Both the position numbers and the translations under genes were made by a program. Shown here in pieces: positions 32,737 to 56,800 of a stretch of 64,000 nt of DNA (its first letter is position 1; each line of letters begins with the position of its first letter). The stretch spans positions 682,001 through 746,000 of the forward strand of contig CATNEN010000015.1 of NCBI GenBank assembly GCA_950097015.1, in the 5' to 3' direction. Below the pieces are notes generated by a model. It saw only the letters and a program-made list of their open reading frames with translations. It did not search any database and was not told where the DNA came from. The DNA comes from Macrostomum hystrix (Eukaryota > Animalia > Platyhelminthes).

Positions 32737-32859
32737 GGCCTGACTACGTAGTGGTGACTTTCGAGACGGTTTGCACATCCTCGATTATCAAGACGATCGA
32801 GCAGCTCGCAGAGCGACAGAGAAGAAGTTTTCTGCCTGGCCGCAAACGAGGTACCATTA

Positions 32860-33600
32860 CTCGACACCTCCCTCAAGGCAGGCAACTGAAGGCGCTCATC
32901 GATAGCGGCGCGAGCTGCAACGTTATCGGCATGACAACTTTCCTAAAACTGGAGACAGCCAAGACGCGCCTTGTTCGATCAACACAGTTGCTGCACACGC
33001 TTGGCACAAGATCACCTCTAGAAACGGCAGGCAGAGCTCAGGTCCCAGTCAACATCTGCGGCTCAGAGGGCCTGGTCAACTTCGCGGTAGGGCACAAATC
33101 TGGAGAAAAGCTGGACGCGAAACATATCGGCAGGCAGTGTCGTACAAACAGCCTCTACACCACAACTGACTCAGCGCCAGAGACCGTCGGGTTCGAATTC
33201 CTCGCGCCCGGCACTTCATGGTAGTTGTCGACCATCGCTCACGCTACCCAGTGGTTGTGGCCATGAAATTGATGACAGCAGAAGCCACTATCAAACAACT
33301 GCAGCAGATCTTCGGGACGTTCGGAACCCCTAGACAGGTTGTTTCCGACAACAGCCCGCTATTCGCATCAAAAGCGTTGAACAGCGTTATCAAAAGTCTC
33401 AGGATCAGCCATCTGTATGCATCAGACGATACCACGGCAAAGAAAATTGCATTGCAGAGCAACTAAATCGGTCCTTCAGCAAGCTGCTCTGCATTTCTGA
33501 AGAATGAGAAACAGATTGGCGAGCTGCGCTGCGGTTTAACGCAACACACCACACACCGTCACGGGAATCTCCCCCGCCGATCTGATGTTCGGAATGTCAG
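32860..33600 (+). mobile_element. Degenerate Ty3/Gypsy-type pol fragments: aspartic protease and integrase core, RT/RNase H absent
   Basis: LKALIDSGASCNVIG (protease). VVVDHRSRYP...IFGTFGTPRQVVSDNSPLFAS (rve core). Frameshifted continuation ..NTPHTVTGISPADLMFG at ~33540-33592. Confidence 0.75.
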
Positions 33601-34841: not shown

Positions 34842-35260
34842 TCAGGCGTTGAAGTTGATGGCGTACTTCGGGTAGGCGCACTCCGCACTGCCGACTGTCC
34901 ACGGTCTGGCGCTGCTGCCATCGCCCGCACAGGGCAGCACTTTGCACAGCAGCGCCAGCCTCCCAGCCTGGCCCCGGAGCTCCGGCGTGTCGGTAAACCT
35001 CAGCTCAGCAACGGAGCCAGGAGAAAAGCCAAGCTTCATCGCCGACTCAGCCTCCAAGCTGATCGCCCAGGTGAATGCGTACAAAGGCTTGGCGGCGGCG
35101 CCGGCCTTCAATCGACAGGCGTCAAACTTGGCTAGCAGGTCGGCATTCTGGTTCACCCACACTTGCGTCACCGTGGCCTTCTGGCCTGTCAGACCTGCCA
35201 GGAACCTAGAGCTGGCGATGGACCAGTGAAGGAAGGTGGGACTGCTGGAGTCCACCTCGT
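34842..35260 (-). other. Second, degenerate PARP-fold domain at the C-terminus
   Basis: [52 protein letters not shown] aligns motif-by-motif with the first domain but lacks the H, Y and E residues. Confidence 0.7.
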
Positions 35261-38200
35261 GTCGCTGAGGCCTCTCGATGCGGGTCACACCCTCAGGCAG
35301 GCTGGTGGGTAAGGCTTTGAGCTCAGCGGAGCCGTGAACAGCATTGTAGTGCACAATGTACTTCGGGTAGGCCTGGGCCGGGTCAAACACCACGAATTCA
35401 TCGTTGAGCACGCCGTTCGTGGCGCGCGAGTTGCGCGGGGCGAACAGGGAGTCGTACTTTTCCTGCCGCATGCGCTTGAAGTTGTACGCGTTTTTGGTGG
35501 CCTGGTGCACTGTCAGGCTGCGACCTGCAAGGGGAGGACATGTTGCAGGTTAGAACCTCGGACTTAAAATCGAACTCTACGCTGGCATACACTCATGCAG
35601 GTGTGTACGTCTGCCCTGACTTTCTCATCGTCAGGCAGGGAACTACGACATTTGACTGCTGCAATTTGACTTCCACCATTTGACTGCGGAGCATTTGACT
35701 GCGGACAATTTGACTGCGGAGCATTTGACTGCGGGCAATTTGACTGCCAGCCATTTGACTGCCACAATTTGACTGCGGACAATTCCACACTTTTGGCTGC
35801 ACATTTATTGACTGCCACTTCAATTGACAGTGGAAAAATTGCATTCGACTGCGGACAAGTACATGTATAGATTTATAGATTTGGCATGTACTCATGCACT
35901 TCCTAAATTTGAAATTTGTATCCTAAATTAGACCCAGGAGCAGGATGTGAATTTGCATCCACTCCCTAGCAAAAAACCCAGTCCGGCAATTTCTAAAATT
36001 AAAAAACAGCAAAGCAAACTTCTCTGTTGCCATAAATTTAGCCTAGTTAGCCTAGGTTAGGCTAGGCCTATCATTCAAGGAAGACAGTAGCAATTCGTTC
36101 ATGCTTTTGCAACAAAGATGGTCAGACTCAGTGCAGTGGAAAATAGGGGCTATGGTGGGAGGTGGGCCCATGGTCATGTATCCAACACTGCCATCCTGAC
36201 TGTGACTCCCATCCCATTATCCCATAGCTTGCACTTTAACTGCACTGGGAGGGGAAATAAATGGATTATTACCCAGGGCAGATGAATGAAATGCGTAAGA
36301 TAATTAGATTAGTGGACAAGAGCCCGAGCTTCTGGGGGATACATTCCCAAAATCAACTAATTTCCCAAAAACATGCAAAACGCATTTCGTTTAGATGTTT
36401 ATAAATTAGTCGCAGAGCGGTTGAAACGAGGGTCACTTTAAACCCATTGCAAATTCCCATGGCTCCGTGAGGATAATTTCAATTGCAAACAATTGTCAAC
36501 AGAGGATTTTCCTTCTCTCAGAGCTCGAAATCTCAAAGATAAAAATGACTAACAAAGTGTGAGAGCAACCGTAAAATACTCATAATTGGTTGCTGAGGCA
36601 CAATTTTTCATTGACAAATTTATACTTATTTATCCGGAAATAATTATATACCTATTGCGAAGCTTTCTGGTCGTGGAGATGGAATGTTATAATGAACGAA
36701 TTTACCATTTATTCTGGTTCTGGAACTGGGGAATCAGATTGTGGCAGTCAAATGTCGGGCTCCCGTCAGGCAGTGCACACTCTCACTGTGCCTGGGAGTT
36801 TGACTCTCAAAAGTCGTAAATTGCACGATAAGCCCCCAAGCCCTCTCTCCTAGGCTGCGCCCCAAATGAATGTGGCCTCGCCGCCGAATCGAGCTTTGGT
36901 TGGAGAGTCTCGTTACCGCAATGCAATAGCAGCAAGGCTGAGCTCACCAAGCAGCACCTCGCACAGCAGCAGCATGTTGGAGCCCTTGGTGTAGATCTCT
37001 CGAGCGCTCTTGGACGAGTCAGAGGCAAAGTAGATCCCAGCGCCGTACATGCCGGCCTTCTCAGGCAGCTTGAAGCCGTTGGTGATGATGCCCTCGACGC
37101 CCTCTACTGAGGTGCCGTGGAATTTCAGCTCGCACCTGCAGAAATCAAGCTCAATTGATAGTTGGATTTCTTCGCTGTCTACTGTGAGTATCACACTGCG
37201 GTCCAGTTACCTGTCTGGCTCGTACATCATGCTGGTTCTGTAGTGCAGAAACCTCTTCCTTAGCGACGCGTTGAGCACCTTCTCAATTTTGGTGACAGTC
37301 GGATACCAGGAGTGCTCAGCCCTGATGAACTTCATCACCCGATCCTCGACGTCCAGAAACTCGGAGGCCGTGTCGCCAGTCCTTTCGAGCGGCTCCCGTT
37401 TCACGCAGCCGTCCATTCGCTGCTTGATGGCATCCAGCTCCGCCTTCGCCTCGAGTCGCGCCGCATTCTTGGCGGCTTCGCGACGTGCCTGAAGCTCCGC
37501 GGCTCGGTTAGCCTCGTCGACGCGGCACTGGGCGCAGGTCTCCGGACTGCAGGGCTGCCAGCACAGCTGCTCACACCTGTGACCGCAGCCAGGGAGGTCT
37601 CGCTCGCAGGGCTGGTAGAGTAGTCAGAGGGTTCAGCATTGAGTTGTCTGGAATGCGCTAAAATTCATTCAGACCAAAGAGCTAACCAGACTCACCTGCT
37701 TGCACTTCAGCTGGCTGACTGGCTGCCAGCACTCCTTCATATCAGGGTGACCGCATTTCTCAAAGACAAATTTAACGAGCTGCCTGCAGCGCAGCGACTC
37801 CACAGCCTCGTGACAGGCCTTGACCATTCTGTGCCCGCAGTCCGGCAAGGTCACCTCAGACCGTTCGCCGCAGCGATCGTGCGAGTGCCTCGGTTGGCAT
37901 GGCAACAAGCAGCGGTGCAGGCCGCAGTGCATCGGTGACCGGCACTCCAGGCGGCAGAAGGCGGCGCCAACGGTCGGCACCGAGGCGGCATCGACTGCAG
38001 TCAGCTGAGTTTCTGTCGGATGCATCGGACAGCGCAGCTGCAGCTCAGTGCCAACGCAGCCGGCGGTTTGCATGGAGCTGACCAGTTTGCGCCAGTGCTG
38101 CGCCTTGTGCGACAGGCAGGCCGCGTTGCCGACTAGCCAGAAGCCGCAGCGGGCGCGCGACTGGGCAACGCAGCGCCGGCTGACCTCCTTGAGGAAGCCG

Positions 38201-39670
38201 ATGTCACCATCCGAGTTGGACCGCACCAGCGACACGATGACGAAGTCGTTTTCGTCTCCCTGATAGACGTCGATGGTGTGCGCCAGGATTGGCGGCCCGC
38301 GAACGCTTGCCGAATCATCGTCGCCGGCGTCCGGAGCGGCTTCCGTAGCGTCGGTTGAGCCAGTCTTCTTGACCTTCTCCTGCCTGCCGGCCTTCCCGGC
38401 TGCAACCGGACGATGCAATTTTAGGATTTTGAAACTCGAGGATACCAAGAATGCCATAAAAGACCAACTCACCTTTGCGACACTCCTCCGGCTTGAAGTC
38501 GGGGAACAACTGCGGATGATCTGCCGCCCGCTGACGCACCAGACGGCTGATGCGGGCGGTCTGGCTGCGGTAGGCGGCCAGGATGGTGATTCGAGATGGG
38601 GCCACGCCCTGGCAAATCAGAAACAGGGCCAGGGCCACGCAGCGCTGGGCCTCCTCCTCGTTGATGTAGCTGCGATCGCCCGACTGCGGCGCCGTGTGGT
38701 CCCAGAAGAAGGCGGGCTTCACCATACAGGCGGCGGGCTGGTGGTAGCAAACAACAGCCTTGTTGTCACGCAGGTCCGGATAGATGTCGTGGAGGAACTT
38801 GGCCAGCTCGGGTCGCATGCGGTTCTGCAGCGCGAGCCGGTCATAGGCGATGCCGTTGTTCACAAGGCGCTCGAACATCGAGACGTTCAGGTCGAAGTCT
38901 CTGCCATAGACAATCAAATAACATTTAAGGTCAACTGTCAACTGTGAAGAAGGGGATCAAGATCCCGAGACTCACCTGGCCAGTTGGTGGCTCTCAGGCT
39001 GAGGTCGCAGCTGCTTGTGGTCTCCGATGAGCACAAGGTGCTGCACAGACGGGCCCAGGCAGGCCACGAGCTGCGGCTCGCCAACCTCGGCAGCCTCTTC
39101 AACCACCACCAGGCTGGGCCGCACCAGGCGCAGGATGTCGCGCTGGATGCTGGCGCCGGTGACCGTCATGCCGACGATCCGGCGGCTGCGCAGAAGGCGG
39201 GCCGTGCGGCGAAGCCGAAGCTCGCGACGCATCGCGGCAAGACTGGAGAACTCATCGATGGCTGCCTGGGGTGGGAATAGACTCAATCAGCTGTTATCCC
39301 ATCCAATCAGCTGTTATCCCATCCAATCAGCTGTTATCCCATCCAATCAGCTGTTATCCCATCCAATCAGCTGTTATCCCATCCAATCAGCTGTTATCCC
39401 ATCCAATCAGCTGTTATCCCATCCAATCAGCTGTTATCCCATCCAACCAGCTGTTATCCCCTCTAAGCTAAGAGGTTCTCACCTGCAGCTGAGGCACGCA
39501 GTCAGCGGCCGACTGCAGGAGGATGAGCTGCAGCAGCACCGCCCGCTCCTCGCTGTTCAGCGCCCACAGATCTGGCACTTTGGCCAGCTGAGCTGCCCGG
39601 GCGGCAGTGGCGGCGGAGCCTGCGCCACCACCAGTCAGCTGGTCTGGCGAGGCCAGAAACGGAGCCAGCC

Positions 39671-39708
<38 letters not shown>

Positions 39709-40034
39709 GTAAGCTGAGTGTCCCATCCGAAGCGGACAACAATGTCCTTCTCCAGGTTACCAGCGTGATCCACAAAAGCGGCCAGCCGCTCCTCCTGCTC
39801 CAGTGCCACATCAGCGTCGGCGTCAGCGTCGGCGTCAGCGTCGGCGTCAGCGTCGGCAGCGGTCGCAGCATTGCGTCGACGCGTTCGACGTTTGCGACTA
39901 GACTTTTTGGTCTGAGCAGTCTGGAGCTGTTGGGACTTGAGATTTCTGCCGCCTGCAGGCTCGAAAGCAACTTCTGGGAGCTGCTCAGCCTCCTCTTCTT
40001 CGGACAGTTCGGGCATCGGTGGCGGCGAAAGCGG

Positions 40035-40065
<31 letters not shown>

Positions 40066-43000
40066 GGCGGGCGGAAAATCTTTTCAGTCACCGAGGGGTC
40101 GGGAATCCACAGCTTCAGGGCCTGAGATTTTATATTAGGGATCCATTAGCAAATCCTTGGGATTCTCGGACACTCAATTAGCAAATCCTTGGGATTCTCG
40201 GACACTCAATTAGCAAATCCTTGGGATTCTCGGACACTCAATTAGCAAATCCTGGGGATTCTCGGACACTCAATTAGCAAATCCTTGGGATTCTCGGACA
40301 CTCAATTAACAAATCCTTGGGATTCTCGGACACTCAATTAGCAAATCCTGGGGATTCTCGGACACTCAATTAGCAAATCCTTGGGATTCTCGGACACTCA
40401 ATTAGCAAATCCTTGGGATTCTCGGACACTCAATTAGCAAATCCTTGGGATTCTCGGACACTCAATTACCAAATCCTTGGGATTCTCGGACACTCAATTA
40501 GCAAATCCTGAGAATTCTCGGACACTCAATTAGCGAATCCTTGGGATTCTTGGACACCCAATTAGGATATCCTTGGGATCATAGAACTGCATAGCGATGC
40601 ATATTCTATCCCATAATCCCAATCGCAAAGTCTCACGTCAACAAAAGCGGCAGCCAGCGGGCTCAGTCTGGTTCGAGCCTCATCGGCCAGCTGACTGATG
40701 AGGTGCGGCTTGAGCTCGCCAACCGTGTTCAGCTCGGCTTGCAGGCCCTGCTGGCGAGTCAGCAGGAAGCGGCGCAGCTGGTCCTCGTTCAGGTGCTCGG
40801 CCAGGAGCAGGGCCTGCCGGCTGAAAACCCGGTTGAAACGAGCGAACAGGTGCTGCAAATCCGCTCTGGCCCTGTCCTGCTCCTCCGACACCTGGCAAAA
40901 TGCAGGATCGGGATAAATTTGGACTATGCTCAATATCAAGTAGTCTTATCAAATCACAAAGTGTCTTCTAATCTACTCAAATTCCAACCTACCTGATTTG
41001 CTCAAATCCACACCTGTCAAATCTACTCAAATCCTGACCTGTCAAATCTACTCAAATCCTGACCTGTCAAATCTACTTCAATCCTGACCTGTCAAATCTA
41101 CTCAAATCCTGACCTGTCAAATCTACTCCAATCCTGACCTATCAAATCTACTCCAATCCTGACCTGTCAAATCTACTCCAATCCTGACCTGTCAAATCTA
41201 CTCAAATCCTCACCTGTCAAATCCACTCAAATTCTCACTTGTCAAATCTACTCCAATCCCAGCTGTCACATCTACCCAAATCCCACCTGTTAAATCTACC
41301 TAAATCCCACCTGTCAAATCTACCCAAATCGCACCTGTCGGAGCTGCTCGCCGCTGCCGCCCTCCAGCTTGGCCAGCAGGTGTCCCAGGCTGATGCTGTC
41401 CAGTTCTTTCTTGCTGCACCTGCCGCCAACCCGCAGCACCTGGTCCTCTGGGAAGTGCTTCAGTAAGTCGACCAGGAAGTCGTCCAAGGCTCGATTCTTG
41501 TAGGCCAGCACGAGAGCCGGAGGTCGGAATGTTGGCAGTGCCGTCAGCTGGCGGACGATGAGCACACCGAGGCTGCTCTTGCCAGTGCCCGGAGGTCCTT
41601 GGATGACTGCCAACCGACGATGCAGAGCGTTGCTGAAGGCTGTCTGCTGGCTTCCGTCCAGCTGGAACTGGCCTCCAATGTCCAGGGTGGGCAGCCGCGG
41701 TGGAGCCGGCCGAGTTGCGTAATACCTGGCCACATAGTCCGGTGGGTCGCGAGCTTGAGTCACGCGGGCTTTGACCAGAATGTCGGCGAAGGGCAGGCGG
41801 TCAGCATCGCAGAGCTGCAGGCCGCGCAGAACCGGCTCGCAGGCTTTGAACAGCGTTGGCGACTCGGCCATGAGCATGCCAGCCGACTGCCTTCATGGGC
41901 GGATGAGGCCGAGGAAGCTGGCTGAGACAGTTCCAGGTAGAACAGGAAACCAGCATTGCGTCAATTACCTGGCGAGCATTCGCTGGAAGGCCTCCACGTC
42001 GCTGACGGTGTTGCAGTCGTTGCAGAGCTCGATCCAGATGATTGACTCCAGCTGCAGCTGGCGCGAGTCCCTGAATGCCACGGTGGCCCACAGCAGCTGG
42101 CTGGGATCGAAGCCTCCGTCCGGGGAGACGCAGAGCAAATTGCCCGGCAACAGCTTGGAGCTGCGGTCCCACCGCTCCGCCCGGTCCCCGTTGCCCCGCT
42201 GGAAGCGCAGGCCGAGGGTCAGAGGCGAGGAGCCGCCGCCGGAGCAACTCAGGCGGACTCCGCACAGCCGGACCTCCGTGTACACCGACATTTCGCGGGG
42301 GTCAAGCACGCCGTGTTGCCAGGCACGCGTGCCCTTGACAACGCGATCGAAGCAGTCGGCGCGGAACAGCCTGAAAGGAGTGAAGGAATGAGTGAGTGAG
42401 TGAGTGAGTGAGTGAGTAAGTGAGTGAGTGAGTGAGTAAGTGAGTGAGTGAGTGAGTGAGTTAGTAAGTGAGTGAGTGAGTGAGTGAGTGAGTGAGTGAG
42501 TGAGTGAGTGAATGAGTGAGTGAGTGAGTGAATGAGTGAGTGAGTGAGTGAGGGAGTGAGGGAGTGAGTGACTGAGTGAGTGAGTGAGTGAGTGAGTAAG
42601 TGAGTGAGTGAGTGAGTGAGTGAGTGACTGAGTGACTGAGTGAGTGAGTGAGTGAGTAAGTGAGTGAGTGAGTGAGTAAGTGAGTAAGTGAGTAAGTGAG
42701 TGAGTGAGTGAGTGAGTGAGTGAGTGAGTGAGTGAGTGAGTGAGTGAGTGAGTGAGTGAGTGAGTGAGTGAGTGAGTAAGTGAGTAAGTGAGTGAGTGAG
42801 TGAGTGAGTGAGTGAGTGAGTGAGTGAGTGAGTGAGTGAGTGAGTGAGTGAGTGAGTGAGTAAGTGAGTGAGTGAGTGAGTAAGTGAGTGAGTGAGTGAG
42901 TGAGTGAGTGAGTGAGTGAGTGAGTGAGTGAGTGAGTGAGTGAGTGAGTGAGTGAGTGAGTGAGTGAGTGAGTGAGTGAGTGAGTGAGTGAGTGAGTGAG

Positions 43001-45042
43001 TGAGTGAATGAGTGAATGAGTGAGCAAGCCAAGCTGCCAACACTGACTCACCTGAAGTAGGTATTACAATAGTCCTCAACATCATCGTAGGCACCCTGCG
43101 TTCGCACCGGCAGGAGGAACTCGGCGATGACGGAGCCTCGGCTGGCGGGTGATTCCATCTCGAAGGCGGTGGGCACCACGGGGAGTCGGCGCCACGGCTG
43201 GCGCAGCTGTTCGCTGCCCTCCAGCGCGACAGAGAGCTGCAGGAGTTCCAGCAGCAGGGTCTGGCTTGTCTCTGACTTTTTATCAGCCATGCCAACCAGG
43301 GGCTCGATGAGGCGCAGCATGGCGGGCACGCTGCAATTGCGGGCATGGTCCAGGCACAGGCGCAGGTAGGAGAGCAGGAGACTGCGGTCCTTTGCGTTGC
43401 CCTCCGTGGCGCTCTTGAATAGCGGCGAGAAGAATTCTCCGGGGGCCTGCGTGCCGCCTGCCGACAGGCAGCGATCGAGGAAGTTCGGCAGCAGGCCGCG
43501 GCGCCGGAGCGGCGGGCGGCTCAGCCCGAGAGAGAGCTCGCATAGGGAGCGGGCGGCCTGCAGTGTTGGAGTGAGGGTGTAGGCAGTGAGGGTGCTGGCA
43601 GTGAGGGTGTAGGCAGTGAGGGTGCTGGCAGTGAGGGTGCTGGCAGTGAGGGTGTAGGCAGTGAGGGTGTAGGCAGTGAGGGTGTAGGCAGTGAGGGTGT
43701 AGGCAGTGAGGGTGCTGGCAGTGAGGGTGTAGGCAGTGAGGGTGTAGGCAGTGAGGGTGTAGGCAGTGAGGGTGCTGGCAGTGAGGGTGTAGGCAGTGAG
43801 GGTGCTGGCAGTGAGGGTGTAGGCAGTGAGGGTGTAGGCAGTGAGGGTGCTGGCAGTGAGGGTGCTGGCAGTGAGGGTGCTGGCAGTGAGGTTGTAGGCA
43901 GTGAGGGTGCTGGCAGTGAGGGTGTAGGCAGTGAGGGTGTAGGTAGTGAGGGTGCTGGCAGTGAGGGTGCTGGCAGTGAGGGTGTAGGCAGTGAGGGTGT
44001 AGGCAGTGAGGGTGTAGGCAGTGAGGGTGCTGGCAGTGAGGGTGTAGGCAGTAAGGGTGTAGGCAGTGAGGGTGCTGGCAGTGAGGGTGCTGGCAGTGAG
44101 GGTGTAGGCAGTGAGGGTGCTGGCAGTGAGGGTGTAGGCAGTGAGGGTGTAGGCAGTGAGGGTGCTGGCAGTGAGGGTGCTGGCAGTGAGGGTGTAGGCA
44201 GTGAGGGTGTAGGTAGTGAGGGTGTAGGCAGTGAGGGTGCTGGCAGTGAGGGTGTAGGCAGTGAGGGTGCTGGCAGTGAGGGTGCTGGCAGTGAGGGTGC
44301 TGGCAGTGAGGGTGCTGGCAGTGAGGGTGCTGGCAGTGAGGGTGTAGGCAGTGAGGGTGCTGGCAGTGAGGGTGTAGGCAGTGAGGGTGTAGGCAGTGAG
44401 GGTGCTGGCAGTGAGGGTGCTGGCAGTGAGGGTGCTGGCAGTGAGGGTGTAGGCAGTGAGGGTATTACAGGCGTGTTGACACGAGTGTTAAAGTACATTT
44501 TATTTACCCACCTCCAAGTCCACCTCGCGCTCGGTGAGTGCCCGCCAAATAATCTGGCAGCGCATGGCTGCTACCAGAGCTTCCTCAGCTCTGTCGCCTT
44601 CATTTGAATCGCTGTACTCGGTGTCACCTTCAGCGCCCTCGTCAGCTGCCACCTTTAGCAGCTGCAGGCAGTGGTTCAGGGCGTCCTGCCACTCAGCTGG
44701 TGAGCGTCGGCTGAGTTGAACCAGAGTCGGCTTGACGGCAGAGGGCTTGCCATCGCCATCGGGCTTTTTGCCGCCCTCACGAGGCAGGAAGGCCAGGCGG
44801 TCCTCAAGCTTGGGGCCCAGAATCTGGCCATAGCCTGACACATTGTCAAAGTGGAAGTGGTAGTCGCGCAACTCCTGGTCAGATTTGGTATTTGGTGCGG
44901 AATTCTCATTGCTGCGAGCAACTCCATGCGATTGGTGGCGCCAATGGACTCCGATGAAGCCGAATCTCTTATTAGGAAACAGGCGCACAATCCAACCTGT
45001 GACTGTGTTGCCACCAAGGCTTATATTCTCTTCTGATTCCAT
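34842..45042 (-). CDS. ZNFX1: ZNFX1-like SF1 helicase fused to PARP domains, 12 exons, ~1860 aa: CSD-like - ZNFX1 N-region - UPF1-like helicase - NFX1 Zn fingers - coiled coil - PARP catalytic (H-Y-E) - degenerate PARP fold
   Basis: Hand-spliced exons: 45042-44512, 43557-43052, 42370-41969, 41890-41335, 40891-40637, 40121-39483, 39265-38976, 38900-38473, 38399-37696, 37611-37211, 37135-36948, 35524-34842. All introns are GT..AG with matching phases; total 5583 nt. ZNFX1 motifs: W..LPVVPT..E...G.Y...[103 protein letters not shown] zinc fingers. Confidence 0.88.
35330..37400 (-). other. PARP-type ADP-ribosyltransferase catalytic domain (exons 10-12 of the ZNFX1-like gene)
   Basis: [16 protein letters not shown]...ELKFHGT (H 37117-37119), [16 protein letters not shown] (Y 37030-37032), LLLCEVLLG|[22 protein letters not shown] (E 35397-35399). 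Confidence 0.9.
35655..35830. repeat. Degenerate ~20-bp repeat with atttgactgc core (intron 11)
   Basis: About 9 recurrences of (c/a)atttgactgc. Confidence 0.8.
39285..39460. repeat. 20-bp minisatellite (intron 6)
   Basis: atccaatcagctgttatccc, ~8-9 copies. Confidence 0.95.
40140..40575. repeat. 32-bp minisatellite (intron 5)
   Basis: aattagcaaatccttgggattctcggacactc, ~13 copies. Confidence 0.95.
40975..41339. repeat. 25-bp minisatellite (intron 4) whose unit includes the exon 4 splice donor
   Basis: aaatctactcaaatcctgacctgtc variants, ~14 copies. The minus-strand unit reads GACAG|GTNNGATTTGAGTAGATTT. Confidence 0.9.
42388..43025. repeat. (GAGT)n microsatellite filling intron 2
   Basis: ~160 units with scattered gtaa/gtga variants. 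Confidence 0.97.
43561..44465. repeat. 15-bp minisatellite filling intron 1 (two interspersed variants)
   Basis: gcagtgagggtgtag / gcagtgagggtgctg, ~60 units. Confidence 0.97.
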
Positions 45043-47851: not shown

Positions 47852-50800
47852 TGTTCATCAGAGGAGGCTGAATCTATCAAGCAATTCGTCAATGAACGCC
47901 AAGAGAAGCTTGTTTCTGTAGTCTGTGATTTCATGGGCCGATATGCAACCATAGAAAGACATTCACTCGAATGTCGCCCAATAAATGATCGACAAGTCCG
48001 GTTTGGAATTTTTTTTGAAGTTTCATTTGCGAGTGCCCAAACTGCTGCAGAATTTTGCAAGCTGTGGACTCAACCTGAATTCAAGGATTCCATTTTGAAG
48101 CTTCAGGAATCTGCTAATGCTCAGTTGGATGGAAGGTTGCTCTCTACTATCTACTTTAATCCAAATCAACTGCAGAAGTGAGTTTCCTTTTTCTATGATT
48201 GATATTTTTACTTAGCTTTCCTAGCTCTTACTTAAATACTTAGTTATGTATATAATGTACTTAAGGTTTGATAAAGGGTATTATTTTCACCAGTGAAAAA
48301 TTTTGTTCTACAGAGGGTCAAGCTGCGATATTGGAAGGCTTTTTCATTTCTAATTGACAATTTCCACTTCCGATTTGTTTACCAGTGCCCTCGCGACAGC
48401 AGGAAATGAAGCAGCCTTCAGTTCTAATGCTGACAATCCGACAGGCCAGACTGGGCCTCAGAATCCGACAGGCCAGACTGGGCCTCAGAATCCGACAGGC
48501 CAGACTGGGCCCTTAAATCCGACAGGCCAGACTGGGCCCTTAAATCCGACAGGCCAGACTGGGCCTCAGAATCCGACAGGCCAGACTGGGCCCTTAAATC
48601 CGACAGGCCAGACTGGGCCCTTAAATCCGACAGGCCAGACTGGGCCTCAGAATCCGACAGGCCAGACTGGGCCTCAGAATCCAACAGGCCAGACTGGGCC
48701 TCAGAATCCGACAGGCCAGACTGGGCCTCAGAATCCGACAGGCCAGACTGCAAGGCCTAATTCAGGCTCATCGAATGTTACTGCGCACGGAGATCACAGA
48801 TTTGGTGGTCGAAAGGTTAGTAGAAAAGGTATCTATTATCAGTAGGACTACCAAGCCATTTTGCCGCCCGTTTTTATACCAAGGGGGTTTTTTGGCTGAA
48901 AATGTTTTTGCCAGCGCCTGAATGCTTTGGGGGTGACTGATTGGTTGACAGACTAGTCGAGGGTGTCCTATGGTTGAGCTGCGCCTAATAGTTAGGCTTG
49001 AACAGTGAAATTGGAGAAATTCGCGTCAGGGTGTCCATAGTGGCCTAGTTCCACCTGTTGTAGCTCTTGAAGGTCTAGATAGATAAGAGAGATAGATCTA
49101 GATAAAGGTCGGTGACCGCAGGAGTCGGAGATGATGCAGGCACATTCGGGTGACATGCTGATAAAGTTTGAAGGTCTGGAAAGGCTGCACTGAGGCGCAG
49201 TGCAAATTCGTGTATAGGGGTGTGTGAAATACACTAGCTCTGATGGGAAAAAGAAAAATCGTACCTTCGGCCAGAAACATTGAATATCTCGAATGTCTGA
49301 AGAGCTGGCGACTTGTTTCTTGTTTCAGAAGATGCGCAACAAAAAGTTGGCCCGTGTTCTTGAGTTGTGGGATTGCATTGCTCTGTTCGGGTGCAACAAA
49401 AATTATTGTCAGGGGGCTGAATTCCCCTCCCTTGGTAGAAAAACGGGCGGCAAAATGGCTTGGTAGTCCTACTGTTAATTTTGTCGTTCAAAATCAATCA
49501 ATATCAATATAGATAAATCCTCACATTGTTTGGGCTTGAATTATTTGGTGAAAAAGATAAAAGGCGTGAAATGATTCAATTCAACTATAAGTCGTCCTTG
49601 TACATGCGCTATAGGGTCGGAGTATCTTTTTAAGCGATGAAAACATTTTTGTCTTTTCAGTCCGCTGTTTTCGAAGAAGAATATCAGAGTATGCCGCCAA
49701 ACATTCGCCAGTTCTATGTAAGTAATCATAAAAAAGATTTTATTTTCAGTCAAATAAATATTTTTAAGGAATTGCAACTTTCACACAAAAACTGTTCTTG
49801 TAGACGAGGCGGGTCTTCTGCATTCAGATTGCCCAATTTTTTCATCTACAACCGAATATTCATGATTATGAGCTCCTCAGAGGATTGAATGGCCAAGTCT
49901 TTGTAACAGCGAATGGCTTGCTGCCGGATATGATATGGCCTATTAATATTTCGTCGCTTGTGCGATCGTTAATTGCTGTCTTCTACACAGAGTCGTCCGT
50001 AAAAAATGTGGATTTGCAAATCGGGCTATCTTTTCTACAAAATAATGAAAATATGGCTGCCTTTCAATCGCTACTCTTTGCAAAGGAGATTAAAGGACAG
50101 TTGGAAAAAGGTTTTCTTCAACAGGTCGACTCACACGATACATTCGGATTGTTGGAGCGGAAGTCGCATGTTGTGAATTTGAAGCAGGAGCCTACGATGC
50201 ACTTCATTTGTTTTGGATATTGCAACCGATTTCTGCCCAATTCATATGTCTTCTGGAACTTTTTTGCGAACCATCTAACCACGTGTGCACTGACTCTGAG
50301 CAGTGATGTCCAGACAATTGATTTCGAGCTGTGTCTGGATGCTCTTAAAAGTCACATTGCTGATACTGATAATGACTTCAAGCAAAGAAATAAGCCAATG
50401 AACGTTGGAGCATCTGTGGAAATGCTGGCAAAGGTTTTGACGAAGCACATGATACAGTTCATTCACTTTTATAACTGGCCTCTAAGCGAATCTGCATGTT
50501 TGCTTTACGTATGCATTCTGCTGCATGCCAATAAAATTGAAAGCGACCAGTTCAAAAACTACGGAGGAAAGGCACAGTTACCATTTTTAGGCGTCCTGAA
50601 CAAGGCACTCACATTATCAAGTGAAAAGCACGCAACGACTTTCATGCAAGCTGCAGGCGACAACCCAGTAGGTTTCGTATCTCTGCTGAAAAACATGAAA
50701 GCTTTCAACTGCCCTGAAACTGTTAAGCTGCTTCAATATTTTCTTGATCGCTTCGATGCAAAATCGCCTATCTTTAATGCCATTCTGGATGATTCCGAAA

Positions 50801-53800
50801 CGATGAAATGCGTTAGTATAATCGAAAAAGTTAGGCTGTTTGTCAAGGCCGAACGAGAGCTGGATCTCGACAAGATTTTGCCGCATGTTACTAAGCTCGC
50901 TGAGATCCCTAAACTGCTTGAGGCTGTATCACAATTAGATTCTAATATTCAAGATGACTTCAAATGCTGCATTCGGGCAAAGGCTGTCGATGTACTTTTT
51001 GCAGAAATAGATCTCGACAATCATCTACGCATTGGTGTTCATGAGTGGCAGCAGATTAATGAATTTATGGACACATGTGGATTTGCTGAAGATCAGAGAA
51101 AAATTGTGTGCGATGCTGTAAAAGCTGCGTGCATGAAAACCCTTTCTGTAGATTCGCCTTTGCAGGCCAGGGAAGAGTTTCAAAAGTCTGTCGCCACCTT
51201 TCTGAATGAATGCAGATTCATTGCCAGCCCTGATGAGGCTATCGAAGTTCTGAGCACTATATTTGAGTTGCAAAAGTCGCCAAAGCTGAAAACGTTTTTG
51301 GCAGAGCAGCTAAACGACCTAAAGGTTGTAAAACTTGCTTTACAAGAATCGAAGAGAGAAGCACTTGAGGTAGTCTTCACAAAAGCATTAAATCTGCTTG
51401 AAGCAAAAGGGAAGCAGGCTAACGACAAAGAAACGAAAAAATGCTGTGTTGTTCAAGACTTGCAGCTACAAATGGAGAGCGCCAAAAACACTGAGGGCCT
51501 GCAGCCACTGTGGCTTGAGGCTTTTAGAAGCTTTACTTTACAGCCACGTTGTGCAACTAAAGAGTACCTTACTGCAATCTGGCATGATTTGAAACAGCTA
51601 AGCGATCGCCCTGACGTAACAGAGCTCTTTGAAGTTTTCTATGAGAGTTGCCTCAGCCATTTGGAGAATCAGCAAACGACAAGACAAGTGGGAGACTTCC
51701 TGCTGGAAATTGATTTCGGAGAAGTATTGCAACCAACAAAGTAAGCAACTGTTCTTCACCTGCAATCCTTACCTGCAAGATGATTTTTTTAACTCAGTGT
51801 TTTAGACAGTTAGTTTTTCTCTGCACACTTTTTCTATTCTTGCGCTTTTATTCAGTTTGTAAGTACATAGACATTAAAATGATATTAAGGGCAGCAGGAA
51901 GTGACACATCTGTTGATGACACTAGACCCGCAGCCAGCGAGAAGGCAACTCTGCCCATTCTGCTAACTCCTGAGCACATACGCTCACAGATACCGTACTC
52001 AGGCACACGCTCATACAGGTGTGTACGAGCGTACATCTGCCCTGACTTTCTCATCGTCAGGCAGTGTACAATTCACCGTGCCTTGGTGGTCGGCCCTCAT
52101 GGTCGTAATTTGAATGACAAGCCCCCAAGCCTTCTTTCCGCGGCTGCGCCCCAAATGAATCGAGCTCAGGGACCTTGGTGCGGGAGGCAAACGCAAATCA
52201 CAGCTCTGCCACTCACCCGCCTACATGCACACGTTTGCTTACTAAACAGTATAAAGTGTCAGACTCCAAAAAATTGTTCGATTATCATAACATTTGCATT
52301 TCACAGGACTACTCGACTTCTTCAACAAGCCGTTTTTTCCTATCTGATCAACACTAAGGTTGCGCACCAGTCCAACCAACTAGAAGACAGACTTTTGACT
52401 ATGTTGAAATGCCCTACGGCCTGGTGTTGGTTGGAGGCTACGAGGGAACACAGCGAAGACATGGAAAGATTACTCGACTGCGAAAACATGCAGCAGTTAA
52501 AAAGCTGGCTGAGTAAACTTAAAGCAATGGAATTCACAGTGCCCCAGCTTGAAACTTTGAAGGCAAAGTTCAAAGATGAGCTTCTGAACATGTTTGATCG
52601 CTTCCTCAGTGCGTGCCGGATTTCAGAAGATCGCGGGATAAAAAGTCTGATTGACAAGATGACTGAGACGAGCGACAGGTACCAAGCTGACGTGGAAAAT
52701 GCAAAGAAAGTACTTGATTGGCTGTCCTCTTTCAGTGAAACGCTTGACGATTTACAAGTTTATCAGAATAGATTCAAGGACACTACTTCAGAAGTATGCA
52801 ACTGCATAAATCTAATGGCAGGACACAACCTTTTTAAATGTGTCTTTCAAGAGTATTACTCCATTTCTCGTGAGCTAAGTGACCTCTTAGAGTCGACAGT
52901 TTTCACTGCAATTTACTCAAGCAGATGTTTTGATGTTACTGAAAGCGTTAGTGAAGTGTTTGGAATAGTTAAACCTGCAATTTCGCAGTACAAGAAATTT
53001 TTGCAAGAAACCATCTCATACAAGAGACTTTCGGATGTTCAAGGGAAATTTTCCCCCGACACAGACATCGATTCCGAACAAAATCTTGCTCGCAGGTTTC
53101 TCGACCAGGAGCCTGAAGCCCTGATGGATACAGCTTTGGTTGAAAATTTAATGCACCTAAAGACATGGAAGCTGTATTGCGATCTGCTTTTAAAGTCGCC
53201 ATTGCGGCATCTTTGTGAAAATCCCGTGCTGCAGGCTAGTAAGCATTATTTAGAAAACTGTGCCGATGATGCGCTCGTGACTGATTTTAATGAGGCGGCT
53301 CTCCAACTTAAACAAATGTGTTTGCCTCTCTCAACAAATCATTGGAACATTCTCACAGCCCTGTGTGATAGAAAGGAATTATTTGAATTTCTAATTGCCC
53401 AGATCAACTCTGACTTTCAACAGCTTTTTGATGCGGCCAACGATGAAGACTCAGAGGAAGTCAGCTTCTCACACATCAATGCTCTCATAAAGCTTCAAGA
53501 AATGTTCAGGCTTCTCATTAATAAAGTGCAGACTGGCGAAGGCATGATGAAGAACAAAACAACAATGGAGGAGCTAGCGATGGCCCTTGATTTTGGTATT
53601 GAATGCTCAGATCAGGAGACCCCAGACGGACGAGCCAAAGACGCAATAGATTACATCGAGATCTGCCACAGCCATCTCAGAGCGATTCAGGCTTTGCACG
53701 ACAGCCTATCGTCTCGTGGCGACTCTTCTAGAAAGCAAGCCCTAACCTTGGTCCAGTGCTTGGATGATGAGAAACTTGATTTTGCGATCGAAATTAGCGA

Positions 53801-56800
53801 CAGTGAATCTACGTGCACATTGATGGATGTTGAAGTACTCGAGGACTGGCCATTGGCTAAATTAATTGAGCACAGATGTCGAGTGCTGATGATCCTGGGA
53901 TCTTCGTATTCCCTTGTCGATGAAAACGACCGCATCCAGTTAAAAATATTTGTGGAAATAGTAGACGTACTGGAGAAGGTAAGTGATTCCATAAATCAAA
54001 TATCTGGTATTTCATTTATGTAAAAATCAAATAGGATTTTTAGGACTATTTAAGACACTAAGCTAGCGAGCTTTTACGAGCCCTGATTCTAACCCGAAGA
54101 TCCAGATTCTCGTTATAAATCAGTAGACTTTTTGTTTGCGCCTTTTATTAATTTTAAGTATTTTTTTACAATTAAGAACCTCTAACTAAATTTCGTAAAA
54201 TATTGCATGCAATAAATTTCTAATCCCCAGGTTTTTCTACTGTACACAAAGCTCCGCGCAGTTGGCCATCCACTTCACAACGAAGCTAGTGTTCAGGGCT
54301 CTGCGAAAGGTTTGAAAGATCGCGAGGGTGAGTGTCGCCAGCATCTGGAGACTTGGGAGGCTGTGCTGCGTGATGCGAGGCAGAGGAAACCTCTACTGAA
54401 CTATTTGTTTGGAGCCAACCTGCTCTGCGTGCACCACCATTTTCTAACGCACTCGCGTGACATTGATATCAAGCCCATTCTTCGCTTCATGAATCTGAAT
54501 GCTGAGAGCGGCGTCAGGCAGTCGCAGGTTCAGTTTAGCTTGGACCAGGTCCGGAAAATGCAGATTAAAGAGCAAAAGGAATGCCTAATGAATCATCTGA
54601 TGTCACTGGCTGACGAGCTGGCTAAGCTGGATGGCCTGCCTGACCACCAGCTTTACTGTGCGCAGCATCTGCCCAGTTCGCCACTGTGTGTTCAGCAAGG
54701 GCGACTCATGGTCTTACGAGTCGATCCGAGCCACGAGCCGCATTCTATCAGAGCGTTTCTCAGTGTCTGGCGTCACTCTCAGGTAATTTCTAATTGCTGA
54801 AAGGAACGAACCTACATGAGAAGTCCATTTGGGTGTCCATACTAAACATATTTCATTTGTATTGTTTGTTTACTTGATATAGTGTTCTAGTGCATTTAAA
54901 GTCACCGTATTTATTGCCCTACATTCATGTAGGCTTTCAGGATAGATGTAGAGTTTATTTAATTTACATTCTACGCTATAAGTTGATTTGTTTTGCAATA
55001 AGCTTGAATCACCAATCCTTGCAGTCCTACAAGCCGCAACCATCAGAGATTTTATTCTGTTCTGCGGACACCGCCGAGGAAGAAATCTCTCTTATCCTGC
55101 GCCGATGCGCTCAGAGTCGTGACAGAGTTCACTACATCATCTGTACAGAGCTGCTCAGTCAGCGACTGCTCAACCACCTGGCTGCTGGAATTCTCTACCT
55201 GTGCGATGCAGGCAACCTTGGGCGCCTGGCTGTGTTCTGCCGAGCTGCCATCAATCACCGACTGCTCGGAATCTTCAGGGACCAGTGTCAACAGCTGCAG
55301 CCGGAATGGGACTCGAATTCACAACTTTCTGAGTCACTCGGCGCCATCTGTGACAACTCTGTCACTGTTGTTCGATCTGAGAGGGCCGGCTGTGGCAAAA
55401 CGGAGATGGTGCGCAGGCTGGCTGCCGACACGGAGAGCAGTCTGAGGTGCGTTCACGTCAGCGGCAGAGTCAATAAGCTTGATCTCGTGGCGAGGCTTCG
55501 TGATCTGGATGAAACTCACCTGCTGCATCTGGACATTGGTTGGGTTGAGGATGCTGGTGGACTAGAGACTTTGCTGTTTGAGGCCCTGCTTACTGGAATG
55601 CTTTGCCACTCCAGCAGACCGTTGATTTTCAAGCCTGGTCGAGTTGTCATCGAGTTGGCAAACAGCGCTAACGATGAGTTGGCAGAGCAGTTCGTACTAT
55701 TCAACCGTCTGCCGTCACGGCATGTGGTGATGATTCGATGGCAAAGCCTGGATGACCTTCTGGTATCGCGCGAGCCAAGGAGCCCAGTTCAGATGGTTGC
55801 GAAGTACAAGCAAGCTCTTGACTTAAGAAGCCTAGACTCTACAGAAGTTTCATTGGACAATGTACTGGAACCTGATGAATGCCGCCGCTGGTTGAAGCGC
55901 GCACTGGACCCCTTGGAAGAGCAGTCCTACCTGACTGTAACAGCCACTCTTCGAGTTTTGGCGGATCAGCTGAAGAAGCTGTCCTCGAGTGCTTTCTTCA
56001 AGATCTCCGGTGTTGCAGAAACGTTTGGCCGCAACGCGTCGCCAACAATCAGATCAGATCTGGTTCGGCTTCTTTTTACCTCAGTTTTGCGGCTGATGTG
56101 CCGATCGGTGGCCCCGTCTAAAGCGAAGCAAGCCAAGTCTAAGCTGGGCGAGTTTGGCTCGGATGAATCAGTGAAGCGATTTGAAGGCTTCCTAAGCTGG
56201 GAGTCCTTCGATCACCTGTCACCGGTGTTTCAGAAGCAGGACATTGCCGCAGTGGAGTTGGTTTATCGCAGTTTACGCGATGTTCCCGATGAAATCCGTC
56301 GTCTGTTCGAGCGGAATATGAGCGCAGGCCGCCTTGTTGACTACGCTGAGATGAAGCAGGCGAAGCTGCTAGAGAAGCTAGTGCGGATCGCTGGCCGCGG
56401 GAATCCTGGACACCGTCCACCGGGACTGTCGGAAGAAGACGACGACGAGCGTGGCGGGAGCGGGTTGTATGCCATCACGGCCGACAACTTTCTGAAGATG
56501 GTTCTCATCAGTCTCCGCATCGACTGCGATGTTCCTGTGCTGATTATTGGAGAGACTGGTTGTGGAAAAACTAGCTTGGTTCGATTCTTGAGCAAGGTGA
56601 GTCTTCAGTCTCACAATTCAGCTGTCTGTACTATGCGTAAGTTTTTCAATATTCAACAAATTTTCACATTTTTTTCGCGAACAGGTTCACGAAGCTCGCC
56701 TAATAGTGCTAAACTTTCACGCGGGCACAACGCAGGAGCGGATAGTCGATGCGGTGAAGAGGGCTGCCAATGAGGCCAGGAATCTGATTTTACAGCGCAG

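What the first reader, a model, noticed from the sequence alone, without database searches (positions are those of the whole stretch)
34842..45042. ZNFX1 helicase whose C-terminal effector is a PARP rather than an RZ-finger E3 ligase
Seen: phase-consistent splicing joins a full ZNFX1-type helicase and NFX1 zinc-finger chain, through a short coiled coil, directly to a PARP catalytic domain, with no RZ finger before the stop. Established: vertebrate ZNFX1 is an antiviral RNA-sensing helicase ending in an RZ (RNF213-ZNFX1) finger ubiquitin module, and C. elegans ZNFX-1 acts in small-RNA inheritance. Inference: this is an effector swap giving an RNA-triggered ADP-ribosyltransferase (sensor-writer in one chain). 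I do not know of a characterised example.
Basis: partly seen in the sequence, partly recalled or inferred. Interest (0 to 1): 0.92.

Follow-up and report, generated by a model that had tools for sequence, protein, structure and literature searches.

The report
ZNFX1-type helicase fused to PARP domains
A flatworm-like genome carries one intact, transcribed gene that joins a ZNFX1-type RNA helicase to an ADP-ribosyltransferase (PARP) instead of the usual ubiquitin-ligase finger. The same fusion sits unstudied in databases for many animals, algae and plants, so it is an old uncharacterised family, not a one-off.

Summary
Its order is: divergent cold-shock-like N-terminus, ZNFX1 domain, SF1 helicase, NFX1-type zinc-finger stalk, helical linker, PARP-A with an intact H-Y-E triad, and a degenerate pseudo-PARP-B. 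There is no RZ finger.

Spliced transcript contigs from four runs confirm nine of the eleven introns. One 3179-nt contig joins the helicase exons to the PARP exons with no mismatch. Exon 10 alone carries a zinc finger, the linker and the start of the PARP domain.

The fusion is not special to this genome. Of the 150 nearest cluster representatives, 82 carry PARP and 10 carry RZ; none carries both. A second search found 128 mostly full-length relatives with the same architecture in horseshoe crabs, crustaceans, cnidarians, Macrostomum, a conifer, a green alga, a haptophyte and a likely Euglena transcript. The effector difference is therefore ancient, and its direction is unresolved.

I found no paper describing or testing this architecture. 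RNA-coupled ADP-ribosylation remains an inference.

This scan had already reported a paralogue on another piece of the same genome (s1-084983), with the same conclusion.

The parts
44512..45042 (-). Exon 1 (aa 1-177), first ATG at 45042. Aa 16-90 (44773-44997) form a divergent cold-shock-like domain ([17 protein letters not shown]).
   Evidence: ORF and upstream stop. BLASTP to P0076 aa 38-168, E 2e-13; the P0076 stretch 40-100 is Pfam CSD. Pfam CSD is not detected directly on the window piece. The donor at 44511 is inferred.
43052..43557 (-). Exon 2 (aa 178-345), N-terminal region ending in ...CNTYFR.
   Evidence: GT-AG borders and phase are inferred. Its length fits the 1094 nt that the 2358-nt transcript contig extends upstream.
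41969..42370 (-). Exon 3, containing the ZNFX1 domain (about 41995-42294).
   Evidence: Pfam PF25396, E 2.1e-10. The 3' junction is confirmed by spliced contigs.
41335..41890 (-). Exon 4, helicase RecA1 start; Walker A GPPGTGKS at 41575-41598.
   Evidence: Pfam AAA_11. Best PDB match is ZNFX1 9q9z, E 1.5e-14. Both junctions confirmed.
40637..40891 (-). Exon 5, a stretch between Walker A and motif II with no family match (probably a helicase insertion).
   Evidence: Both junctions confirmed. No Pfam hit.
39483..40121 (-). Exon 6, low-complexity insertion (P13, (DA)7, Q12; about 39582-40076) followed by helicase sequence.
   Evidence: Open frame. Tiled by transcript contigs that break only at the simple repeats.
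38976..39265 (-). Exon 7, helicase motif [10 protein letters not shown] at 39086-39109.
   Evidence: Pfam AAA_11 C-terminal part. Junctions confirmed.
38473..38900 (-). Exon 8, helicase RecA2.
   Evidence: Pfam AAA_12, E 5e-13. Junctions confirmed.
37696..38399 (-). Exon 9, helicase motifs V (38215-38277) and VI (38149-38169), then the NFX1-type zinc-finger stalk (from about 38034).
   Evidence: Pfam AAA_12. Aligns to ZNFX1 9q9z residues 1266-1450 through the fingers, E 1.2e-24. Junctions confirmed.
37211..37611 (-). Exon 10, the junction exon: last zinc finger ([13 protein letters not shown]), helical linker (37408-37524) and the start of PARP-A.
   Evidence: Single open frame. Both junctions confirmed in X4, X5 and X1. 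The homologue model shows a long helix running into the PARP fold.
36948..37135 (-). Exon 11, PARP-A core: H1577 (37117-37119) and Y1606 (37030-37032), with a tankyrase-like [16 protein letters not shown] loop.
   Evidence: Pfam PARP, E 1e-14. PDB hits PARP3, PARP15 and tankyrase. Junctions confirmed.
34842..35524 (-). Exon 12: end of PARP-A with catalytic E1676 (35397-35399), then pseudo-PARP-B (34845-35252) and the stop codon.
   Evidence: Pfam PARP C-terminal end. Triad mapping. AF2 model of the last 160 aa: pLDDT 90.3, pTM 0.86; best fold match is the inactive PARP13/ZAP domain, E 1e-5.

Best explanation
Shown:
- This is a single, intact, transcribed gene for a member of an ancient, eukaryote-wide but uncharacterised branch of ZNFX1-like SF1 helicases.
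- The domain order is cold-shock-like domain, ZNFX1 domain, UPF1-like helicase, rigid NFX1-type zinc-finger stalk, helical linker, then two PARP-fold domains. These occupy the place where vertebrate ZNFX1 has its Miz-like and RZ ubiquitin-ligase modules.
- PARP-A keeps the H-Y-(Y)-E NAD+ site. PARP-B has lost the His and Tyr in this flatworm lineage.

Inferred mechanism (about 0.4):
- The helicase and the cold-shock-like domain bind RNA. As reported for human ZNFX1, RNA binding relieves helicase auto-inhibition.
- The stalk holds the PARP-A writer next to the bound ribonucleoprotein.
- PARP-A then ADP-ribosylates itself, nearby proteins or RNA ends.
- The dead PARP-B acts as a scaffold or regulator, as the inactive PARP domain of ZAP/PARP13 is thought to.
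- The likely setting is antiviral or transposon/small-RNA surveillance.
- Mono- versus poly-ADP-ribosylation cannot be decided from sequence.
For: - One gene, one mRNA: spliced contigs join the helicase and PARP exons, and the junction exon carries both a zinc finger and the PARP start.
- ZNFX1 identity: PF25396, AAA_11 and AAA_12. The best PDB match is ZNFX1 through the finger stalk.
- PARP-A: Pfam PARP. H1577/Y1606/Y1619/E1676 align with the H-Y-Y-E that 143 of 187 family members keep.
- PARP-A in the homologue: the model of the 72%-identical homologue has pLDDT 88 and matches tankyrase and PARP4 catalytic domains at E 1e-13.
- PARP-B: the PARP fold is predicted with pLDDT 90 and is nearest to inactive PARP13, with T and R in place of H and Y.
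- Family spread: 82 of the 150 nearest representatives carry PARP. 128 relatives at E<=1e-10 share the Pfam set PARP+AAA_12+AAA_11+ZNFX1(+CSD) across animals, algae, a conifer and a likely Euglena transcript.
- Placement: the window protein is sister to Macrostomum lignano proteins (100*, 98*).
- Mechanistic analogy: RNA-relieved auto-inhibition and the rigid stalk in human ZNFX1 come from bioRxiv 10.1101/2025.10.14.682297.
Against: - No biochemical or expression-under-infection data exist for any member.
- An H-Y-E triad does not prove activity or polymer formation.
- RNA (rather than DNA) binding is assumed from ZNFX1/UPF1 relatives.
- The cold-shock domain is below the Pfam threshold in the window protein itself.
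- The two 5'-most introns are inferred, not seen in reads.
- C. elegans ZNFX-1 works in germ granules rather than in antiviral signalling, so the biological setting is open.
Confidence: 0.75

Rival explanations
1. Two adjacent genes (a ZNFX1-like helicase and a separate PARP gene) wrongly read as one, or a chimeric assembly.
For: The large 1423-nt intron 11 splits the PARP domain and holds a transposon-like element. Transcript contigs are assemblies, not single molecules.
Against: One 3179-nt contig in independent runs crosses five introns from helicase motif II to the 3'UTR with 0 mismatches. Exon 10 contains both a finger and the PARP start in one frame. More than 100 homologues from other species have the same order in one protein.
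Confidence: 0.02
2. The gene works in germline small-RNA inheritance or transposon surveillance, like C. elegans ZNFX-1, not as an antiviral sensor. The PARP domain would modify granule components or build poly(ADP-ribose) scaffolds for condensates.
For: ZNFX-1 in C. elegans lacks an RZ domain and acts in nucleoprotein granules (cited in bioRxiv 10.1101/2025.10.14.682297). The window protein has P-, DA- and Q-rich low-complexity stretches. Background knowledge: poly(ADP-ribose) is a known condensate seed.
Against: No tissue or germline expression data were examined. The family is multi-copy in Macrostomum (P0001, P0033, this gene, and s1-084983), which fits fast-evolving defence genes at least as well.
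Confidence: 0.2
3. The PARP module acts mainly as an NAD+ consumer, or as a nucleic-acid (RNA-end) ADP-ribosyltransferase, rather than as a protein writer.
For: PARP-A has an intact NAD+ site. Background knowledge: several PARPs (PARP10, 11, 14, 15) can ADP-ribosylate phosphorylated RNA ends in vitro. The writer is tethered to an RNA helicase.
Against: No feature examined here separates protein from nucleic-acid targets. PARP-A is nearest to tankyrase and PARP4, which modify proteins.
Confidence: 0.15
4. The PARP part is catalytically silent and the protein is just a helicase or scaffold (a ZAP-like use of a dead PARP domain).
For: PARP-B is clearly degenerate in this lineage. H-Y-E alone does not guarantee activity.
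Against: PARP-A keeps H, Y, Y and E and the GxGxYFA loop under strong family-wide conservation: 143 of 187 members have HYYE, and there are near-invariant columns in the alignment.
Confidence: 0.1

Closest known systems
[quoted passage not shown]
   Same: ZNFX1 domain PF25396, UPF1-like SF1 helicase motifs, an NFX1-type zinc-finger stalk directly after the helicase, and a helical segment before the C-terminal effector.
   Different: The C-terminus is PARP-A plus pseudo-PARP-B instead of the Miz-like plus RZ ubiquitin-ligase modules. The N-terminus is cold-shock-like, with no armadillo match seen. A long low-complexity insertion sits in the helicase.
Database family 'NFX1-type zinc finger-containing protein 1-like' / 'Poly [ADP-ribose] polymerase'. 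Examples: Limulus XP_013775656.1, Macrostomum lignano A0A1I8J2R6, and unnumbered records from Tachypleus, Rhopilema, Xenia, Tigriopus, Cymbomonas, Prymnesium and Cryptomeria.
   Same: Same domain order CSD-ZNFX1-helicase-fingers-PARP-PARP. 72% identity to the M. lignano fragment over aa 963-1859. PARP-A has H-Y-Y-E.
   Different: Most members keep H-Y-Y in PARP-B, with E, M, A, I or Q at the catalytic position. The window protein and its M. lignano sister have lost H and Y there. None of these proteins has a published function that I could find.
Tankyrase-1/2 and PARP4 catalytic domains
   Same: Nearest solved relatives of PARP-A by sequence (E 3e-10) and by fold (E 1e-13, TM 0.72-0.78 on the target). 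Shared H-Y-E and the GM(Y/F)GAGIYFA loop.
   Different: Only about 24% identity. No ankyrin/SAM or vault context. No membership in those clades is claimed.
ZAP/PARP13 (RNA-binding antiviral protein with an inactive PARP domain)
   Same: A nucleic-acid-binding N-terminal part tethered to a PARP fold that has lost its NAD+ site. The window's PARP-B is structurally nearest to the PARP13 domain.
   Different: ZAP binds RNA through CCCH fingers, has no helicase and has no active PARP domain. Here an apparently active PARP-A precedes the dead one.

Membership tests
ZNFX1-type helicases | UPF1-like SF1 helicase core with motifs I, II, V and VI | tested here: met
   [37 protein letters not shown] and VAQSRAR are present. 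Pfam AAA_11 and AAA_12. Best PDB hit is ZNFX1, then SEN1 and UPF1.
ZNFX1-type helicases | ZNFX1 domain (PF25396) upstream of the helicase | tested here: met
   E 2.1e-10, 41 bits against a cut-off of 27, on exon 3.
ZNFX1-type helicases | Chain of NFX1-type zinc fingers directly after the helicase | tested here: met
   Alignment to ZNFX1 9q9z residues 1266-1450 runs through the fingers. CGH-x-C motifs are present. The Pfam zf-NF-X1 model itself gave no hit on the pieces.
ZNFX1-type helicases | C-terminal RZ finger (PF20173) | tested here: not met
   No Pfam hit. An RZ profile built from P0147 found 10 relatives but not the model. No PARP-bearing relative has RZ.
ZNFX1-type helicases | N-terminal armadillo-type dimerisation domain | tested here: inconclusive
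   No Pfam hit on exons 1-2. The N-terminus aligns instead to the CSD region of relatives. No structure was predicted for aa 100-345.
PARP/ARTD ADP-ribosyltransferases | PARP catalytic fold (PF00644) | tested here: met
   Pfam E 1e-14 on exon 11 and the C-terminal end on exon 12. The homologue model matches tankyrase and PARP4.
PARP/ARTD ADP-ribosyltransferases | H-Y-E NAD+-binding/catalytic triad | tested here: met
   H1577, Y1606 (+Y1619) and E1676 in PARP-A. Not met in PARP-B (T, R and gaps).
PARP/ARTD ADP-ribosyltransferases | NAD+-dependent ADP-ribosyl transfer | not testable with these tools
   Needs biochemistry.
CSD-ZNFX1-helicase-PARP-PARP database family | Same domain order and closest kinship on a helicase tree | tested here: met
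   Sister to M. lignano P0001 (100*) and P0033 (98*), inside PARP-bearing rows. Shared Pfam sets.
CSD-ZNFX1-helicase-PARP-PARP database family | Second PARP domain retaining H-Y-Y | tested here: not met
   Family domain B is HYY+E/M/A/I/Q in about 157 of 163 proteins. The window has T, R and P0001 has T, K.

The most novel reading that the evidence does not exclude
ZNFX1-like helicases are an ancient eukaryotic sensor chassis whose rigid finger stalk carries interchangeable writers: ubiquitin (Miz/RZ) in one lineage and ADP-ribose (tandem PARP) in another. The PARP lineage would be an RNA-activated ADP-ribosylating immune or RNA-surveillance effector. It is absent from the named hits among vertebrates, insects and nematodes, which would explain why it has gone unnoticed. 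The PARP form may even be the older state. Here it also lies head-to-head with an RNF213-like gene; RNF213 is the only other RZ-finger protein.
Probability: 0.3. Interest if true: 0.8.

Novelty: new variant of a known kind. Interest (0 to 1): 0.5.

Why it matters
Human ZNFX1 has been reported as an RNA helicase that couples RNA binding to ubiquitin ligation (bioRxiv 10.1101/2025.10.14.682297). A sister lineage builds on the same chassis but carries a PARP writer, and it is conserved from a likely Euglena transcript and algae to cnidarians, arthropods and flatworms. That would show that RNA sensing has been wired to ADP-ribosylation as well as to ubiquitin deep in eukaryote history.

The idea is directly testable. 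Recombinant protein can be assayed with and without RNA, and RNAi can be done in Macrostomum or Nematostella-like models.

The family also adds a helicase-linked group that two standard PARP family surveys do not mention; neither contains the word 'helicase'.

For this particular window the value is lower. The gene is one more member, and the scan had already found a paralogue in the same genome.

Tried and rejected
- Pfam on exon pieces did not report zf-NF-X1 or CSD for the window. Both were supported only through alignment to ZNFX1 and to relatives with Pfam CSD.
- A PDB sequence search with the N-terminal 81 aa gave only chance-level uS8 hits.
- Blasi et al. 2022 (metazoan ZNFX1 survey) and Aravind et al. 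2015 (ADP-ribosyltransferase natural history) are not held. I cannot exclude that one of them mentions the fusion.
- Literature searches with ZNFX1 + PARP, PARP domain, ADP-ribosyl or cnidaria returned nothing that describes the architecture.
- 'Separate genes', 'assembly chimera' and 'pseudogene' were considered and rejected on the transcript, open-frame and homologue evidence.
- The whole spliced protein was not submitted to any database tool, because only exon pieces can be referenced. Whole-protein statements rest on local scripts.
- The tree is a quick LG+G4 search on a sample biased towards the query's relatives and has no outgroup. I draw no direction of change from it.
Full report
**What is in the sequence**

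The stretch 34842-45042 holds a minus-strand, intron-containing eukaryotic gene. Open frames on that strand carry helicase, zinc-finger and PARP sequences. Pfam on the raw ORF pieces finds AAA_11, AAA_12 and the PARP catalytic domain.

With splice sites placed from transcript evidence, 12 exons give a 5583-nt CDS. It encodes 1860 aa with a single terminal stop.

**Transcript evidence**

Four runs of one study (X4-X7) hold intron-free contigs that match the window at 100%.
- They show GT..AG joints for nine introns: 35525-36947, 37136-37210, 37612-37695, 38400-38472, 38901-38975, 39266-39482, 40122-40636, 40892-41334 and 41891-41968.
- One 3179-nt contig runs from exon 6 (39661) through exons 7-12 into the 3'UTR (34700).
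- A 2358-nt contig runs from exon 6 (40080) through exons 5, 4 and 3 and continues 1094 nt upstream. That is exactly the length of the predicted rest of E3 + E2 + E1 plus 27 nt of leader.
- The contigs break only at the proline and glutamine codon repeats inside exon 6. Shorter contigs tile the gap between them.
- Runs of a second study (X1, X3) independently show the 37136-37210 and 37612-37695 joints.

Independent of any reads, exon 10 (37211-37611) is a single open frame. It contains a zinc finger ([13 protein letters not shown]), a helical linker and the first strands of the PARP domain. The fusion is therefore written in the genome itself.

**Domain content of the 1860-aa protein**

- N-terminus (aa 16-90, [17 protein letters not shown]...). 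It aligns to the N-terminus of relative P0076 at E 2e-13. The matching P0076 stretch is a Pfam cold-shock domain. Pfam does not call CSD on the window piece itself, so this domain is divergent here.
- ZNFX1 domain. Exon 3 hits PF25396 at E 2e-10.
- Helicase. Motifs I, II, V and VI are intact. For both helicase exons the best solved-structure match is human ZNFX1 (9q9z). For exon 9 the alignment continues from motif V through the zinc-finger stalk (E 1.2e-24). UPF1 and SEN1 follow at about 5e-9.
- PARP-A. After the fingers and a helical linker comes PARP-A, with H1577, Y1606, Y1619 and E1676. Its [16 protein letters not shown] loop resembles tankyrase.
- Nearest solved relatives of PARP-A, tested with the 72%-identical M. 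lignano homologue P0001. By sequence they are tankyrase-1/2, then PARP15, ZAP and PARP4. By fold they are tankyrase and PARP4 at E about 1e-13.
- PARP-B. The last 160 aa fold confidently (pLDDT 90.3, pTM 0.86) into a PARP fold. The best structural match is the catalytically inactive domain of ZAP/PARP13. The His and Tyr of the NAD+ site are replaced by T and R. This domain is therefore a pseudo-PARP.
- No RZ finger. None was found by Pfam or by a local RZ profile that recovered 10 relatives.

**How common the architecture is**

A phmmer search with exon 9 against 1.84 billion cluster representatives gave 7501 hits. The best 150 break down as follows:

| Set | PARP after the fingers | RZ finger | Neither | Both |
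|---|---|---|---|---|
| All 150 | 82 | 10 | 58 (mostly fragments) | 0 |
| Those of at least 1400 aa | 47 | 9 | 11 | 0 |

Every RZ protein ranks 94th or lower.

Pfam on full-length examples gives CSD - ZNFX1 - AAA_11 - AAA_12 - PARP x2.

A second search used the tandem-PARP region of the Limulus protein. It returned 128 proteins at E<=1e-10, and nearly all carry PARP + AAA_12 + AAA_11 + PF25396. The hits that carry names come from:
- chelicerates: Limulus and Tachypleus (named 'NFX1-type zinc finger-containing protein 1-like');
- crustaceans: Tigriopus and Artemia;
- cnidarians: Rhopilema, Xenia, Paramuricea and Clytia;
- the flatworm Macrostomum lignano;
- non-animals: the conifer Cryptomeria, the green alga Cymbomonas, the haptophyte Prymnesium and a EukProt record labelled EG_transcript_85 (probably Euglena gracilis).

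No named hit was a vertebrate, insect or nematode. Absence from those groups was not tested.

The nearest relative is a 902-aa M. lignano fragment, 72% identical over aa 963-1859. The window therefore probably comes from Macrostomum or a close relative.

**Family-wide pattern of the two PARP domains**

161 of the 259 proteins fetched have two PARP domains.
- Domain A is H-Y-Y-E in 143 of 187 proteins.
- Domain B keeps H-Y-Y in nearly all. The catalytic position is E in 61 proteins and M, A, I, Q or V in about 82. This echoes the split between H-Y-E and H-Y-[I/L/M]-type PARPs.
- Loss of the domain B NAD+ site is particular to the window protein and its M. lignano sister.

**Phylogeny**

I built a quick maximum-likelihood tree of the helicase C-lobe plus finger region (105 rows).
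- The window protein is placed with M. lignano P0001 (100*) and then P0033 (98*).
- All 10 RZ proteins fall in one clade, together with truncated rows.
- PARP-bearing rows, protist and plant sequences included, make up the rest.
- The starred branches allow a single origin for RZ.

The sample is biased towards the query's relatives and the tree is unrooted. The data show two old lineages with different effectors. They do not show which effector replaced which.

**Literature**

- I found no paper that describes or tests a ZNFX1-PARP protein.
- Two standard surveys of PARP evolution do not contain the word 'helicase' (PMC2964712; PMC4245714).
- A 2025 ZNFX1 review lists the armadillo fold, helicase, six NFX1 fingers, coiled coil and RZ finger. 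It has no occurrence of 'PARP' or 'ADP-ribos' (PMC11959080).
- The 2025 cryo-EM preprint reports RNA-relieved auto-inhibition, a rigid finger stalk and a bi-catalytic Miz-like + RZ E3. It traces RZ back to choanoflagellates and does not mention PARP (10.1101/2025.10.14.682297).
- Two possibly relevant papers are not held.
- An earlier follow-up in this scan, on another piece of the same genome, reached the same conclusion about a paralogue (s1-084983). I reached mine independently and then found it agreed.

**Mechanism**

What is shown: the architecture, an intact frame, transcription, intact helicase motifs, and an intact PARP-A triad.

What is inferred (about 0.4): RNA binding by the helicase and the CSD positions or activates PARP-A, which ADP-ribosylates itself, neighbouring proteins or RNA ends. 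The dead PARP-B serves as a scaffold or regulator.

Rivals are a germ-granule or small-RNA role, NAD+ consumption or RNA-end modification, and a silent PARP. They are listed with the tests that would separate them.

**Verdict**

It is wrong in implying a local or unique swap.

The gene is a new member of a widespread, database-visible and, as far as I could find, unstudied variant of the ZNFX1 kind. Interest is moderate for this window and higher for the family as a whole.

Noticed in passing
window 49885-62858 (+), running off the window end: Long ORFs of a giant ATPase gene. One ORF (54890-56770) has a dynein-type AAA_5 P-loop, and its best solved-structure hits are RNF213 (E 1e-13, over only 49 aa). 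It lies head-to-head with the ZNFX1-PARP gene. RNF213 is the only other protein family with an RZ finger.
   Followed up: partly
window 35525-36947 (intron 11): A MITE-like insertion with inverted arms at 35646-35674 and 36729-36757 (83% complementary) and 15-nt subterminal tandem repeats (ATTTGACTGCGGAnA). Its ends reach a transcript-contig depth of 800-1950, against about 16 for the exons, so it belongs to an abundant expressed repeat family.
   Followed up: partly
window 43558-44511 and 42371-43051 (introns 1 and 2): Both introns are almost entirely microsatellite-like arrays (periods of about 15 and 12 nt) with GC skew up to +0.45. They create long spurious ORFs (PSLPA..., THSL...) and block read mapping.
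   Followed up: no
window 39582-40076 (exon 6): A coding low-complexity block (13 prolines, seven Asp-Ala repeats, 12 glutamines) inserted between helicase motifs I and II. Transcript assemblies break only here.
   Followed up: no
window 32751-33466 (+): ORFs resembling retroelement protease (DSGAS motif) and integrase fragments just downstream of the gene's 3' end. Read by eye only.
   Followed up: no
P0203, P0204, P0208, P0211, P0244, P0247 (relatives): The same tandem-PARP module occurs with other partners: C2H2/dsRBD-type domains in Artemia, a protein-kinase domain (P0211), ubiquitin (P0244) and CCCH fingers in Prymnesium (P0247). This suggests the PARP pair is a mobile effector cassette.
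   Followed up: no
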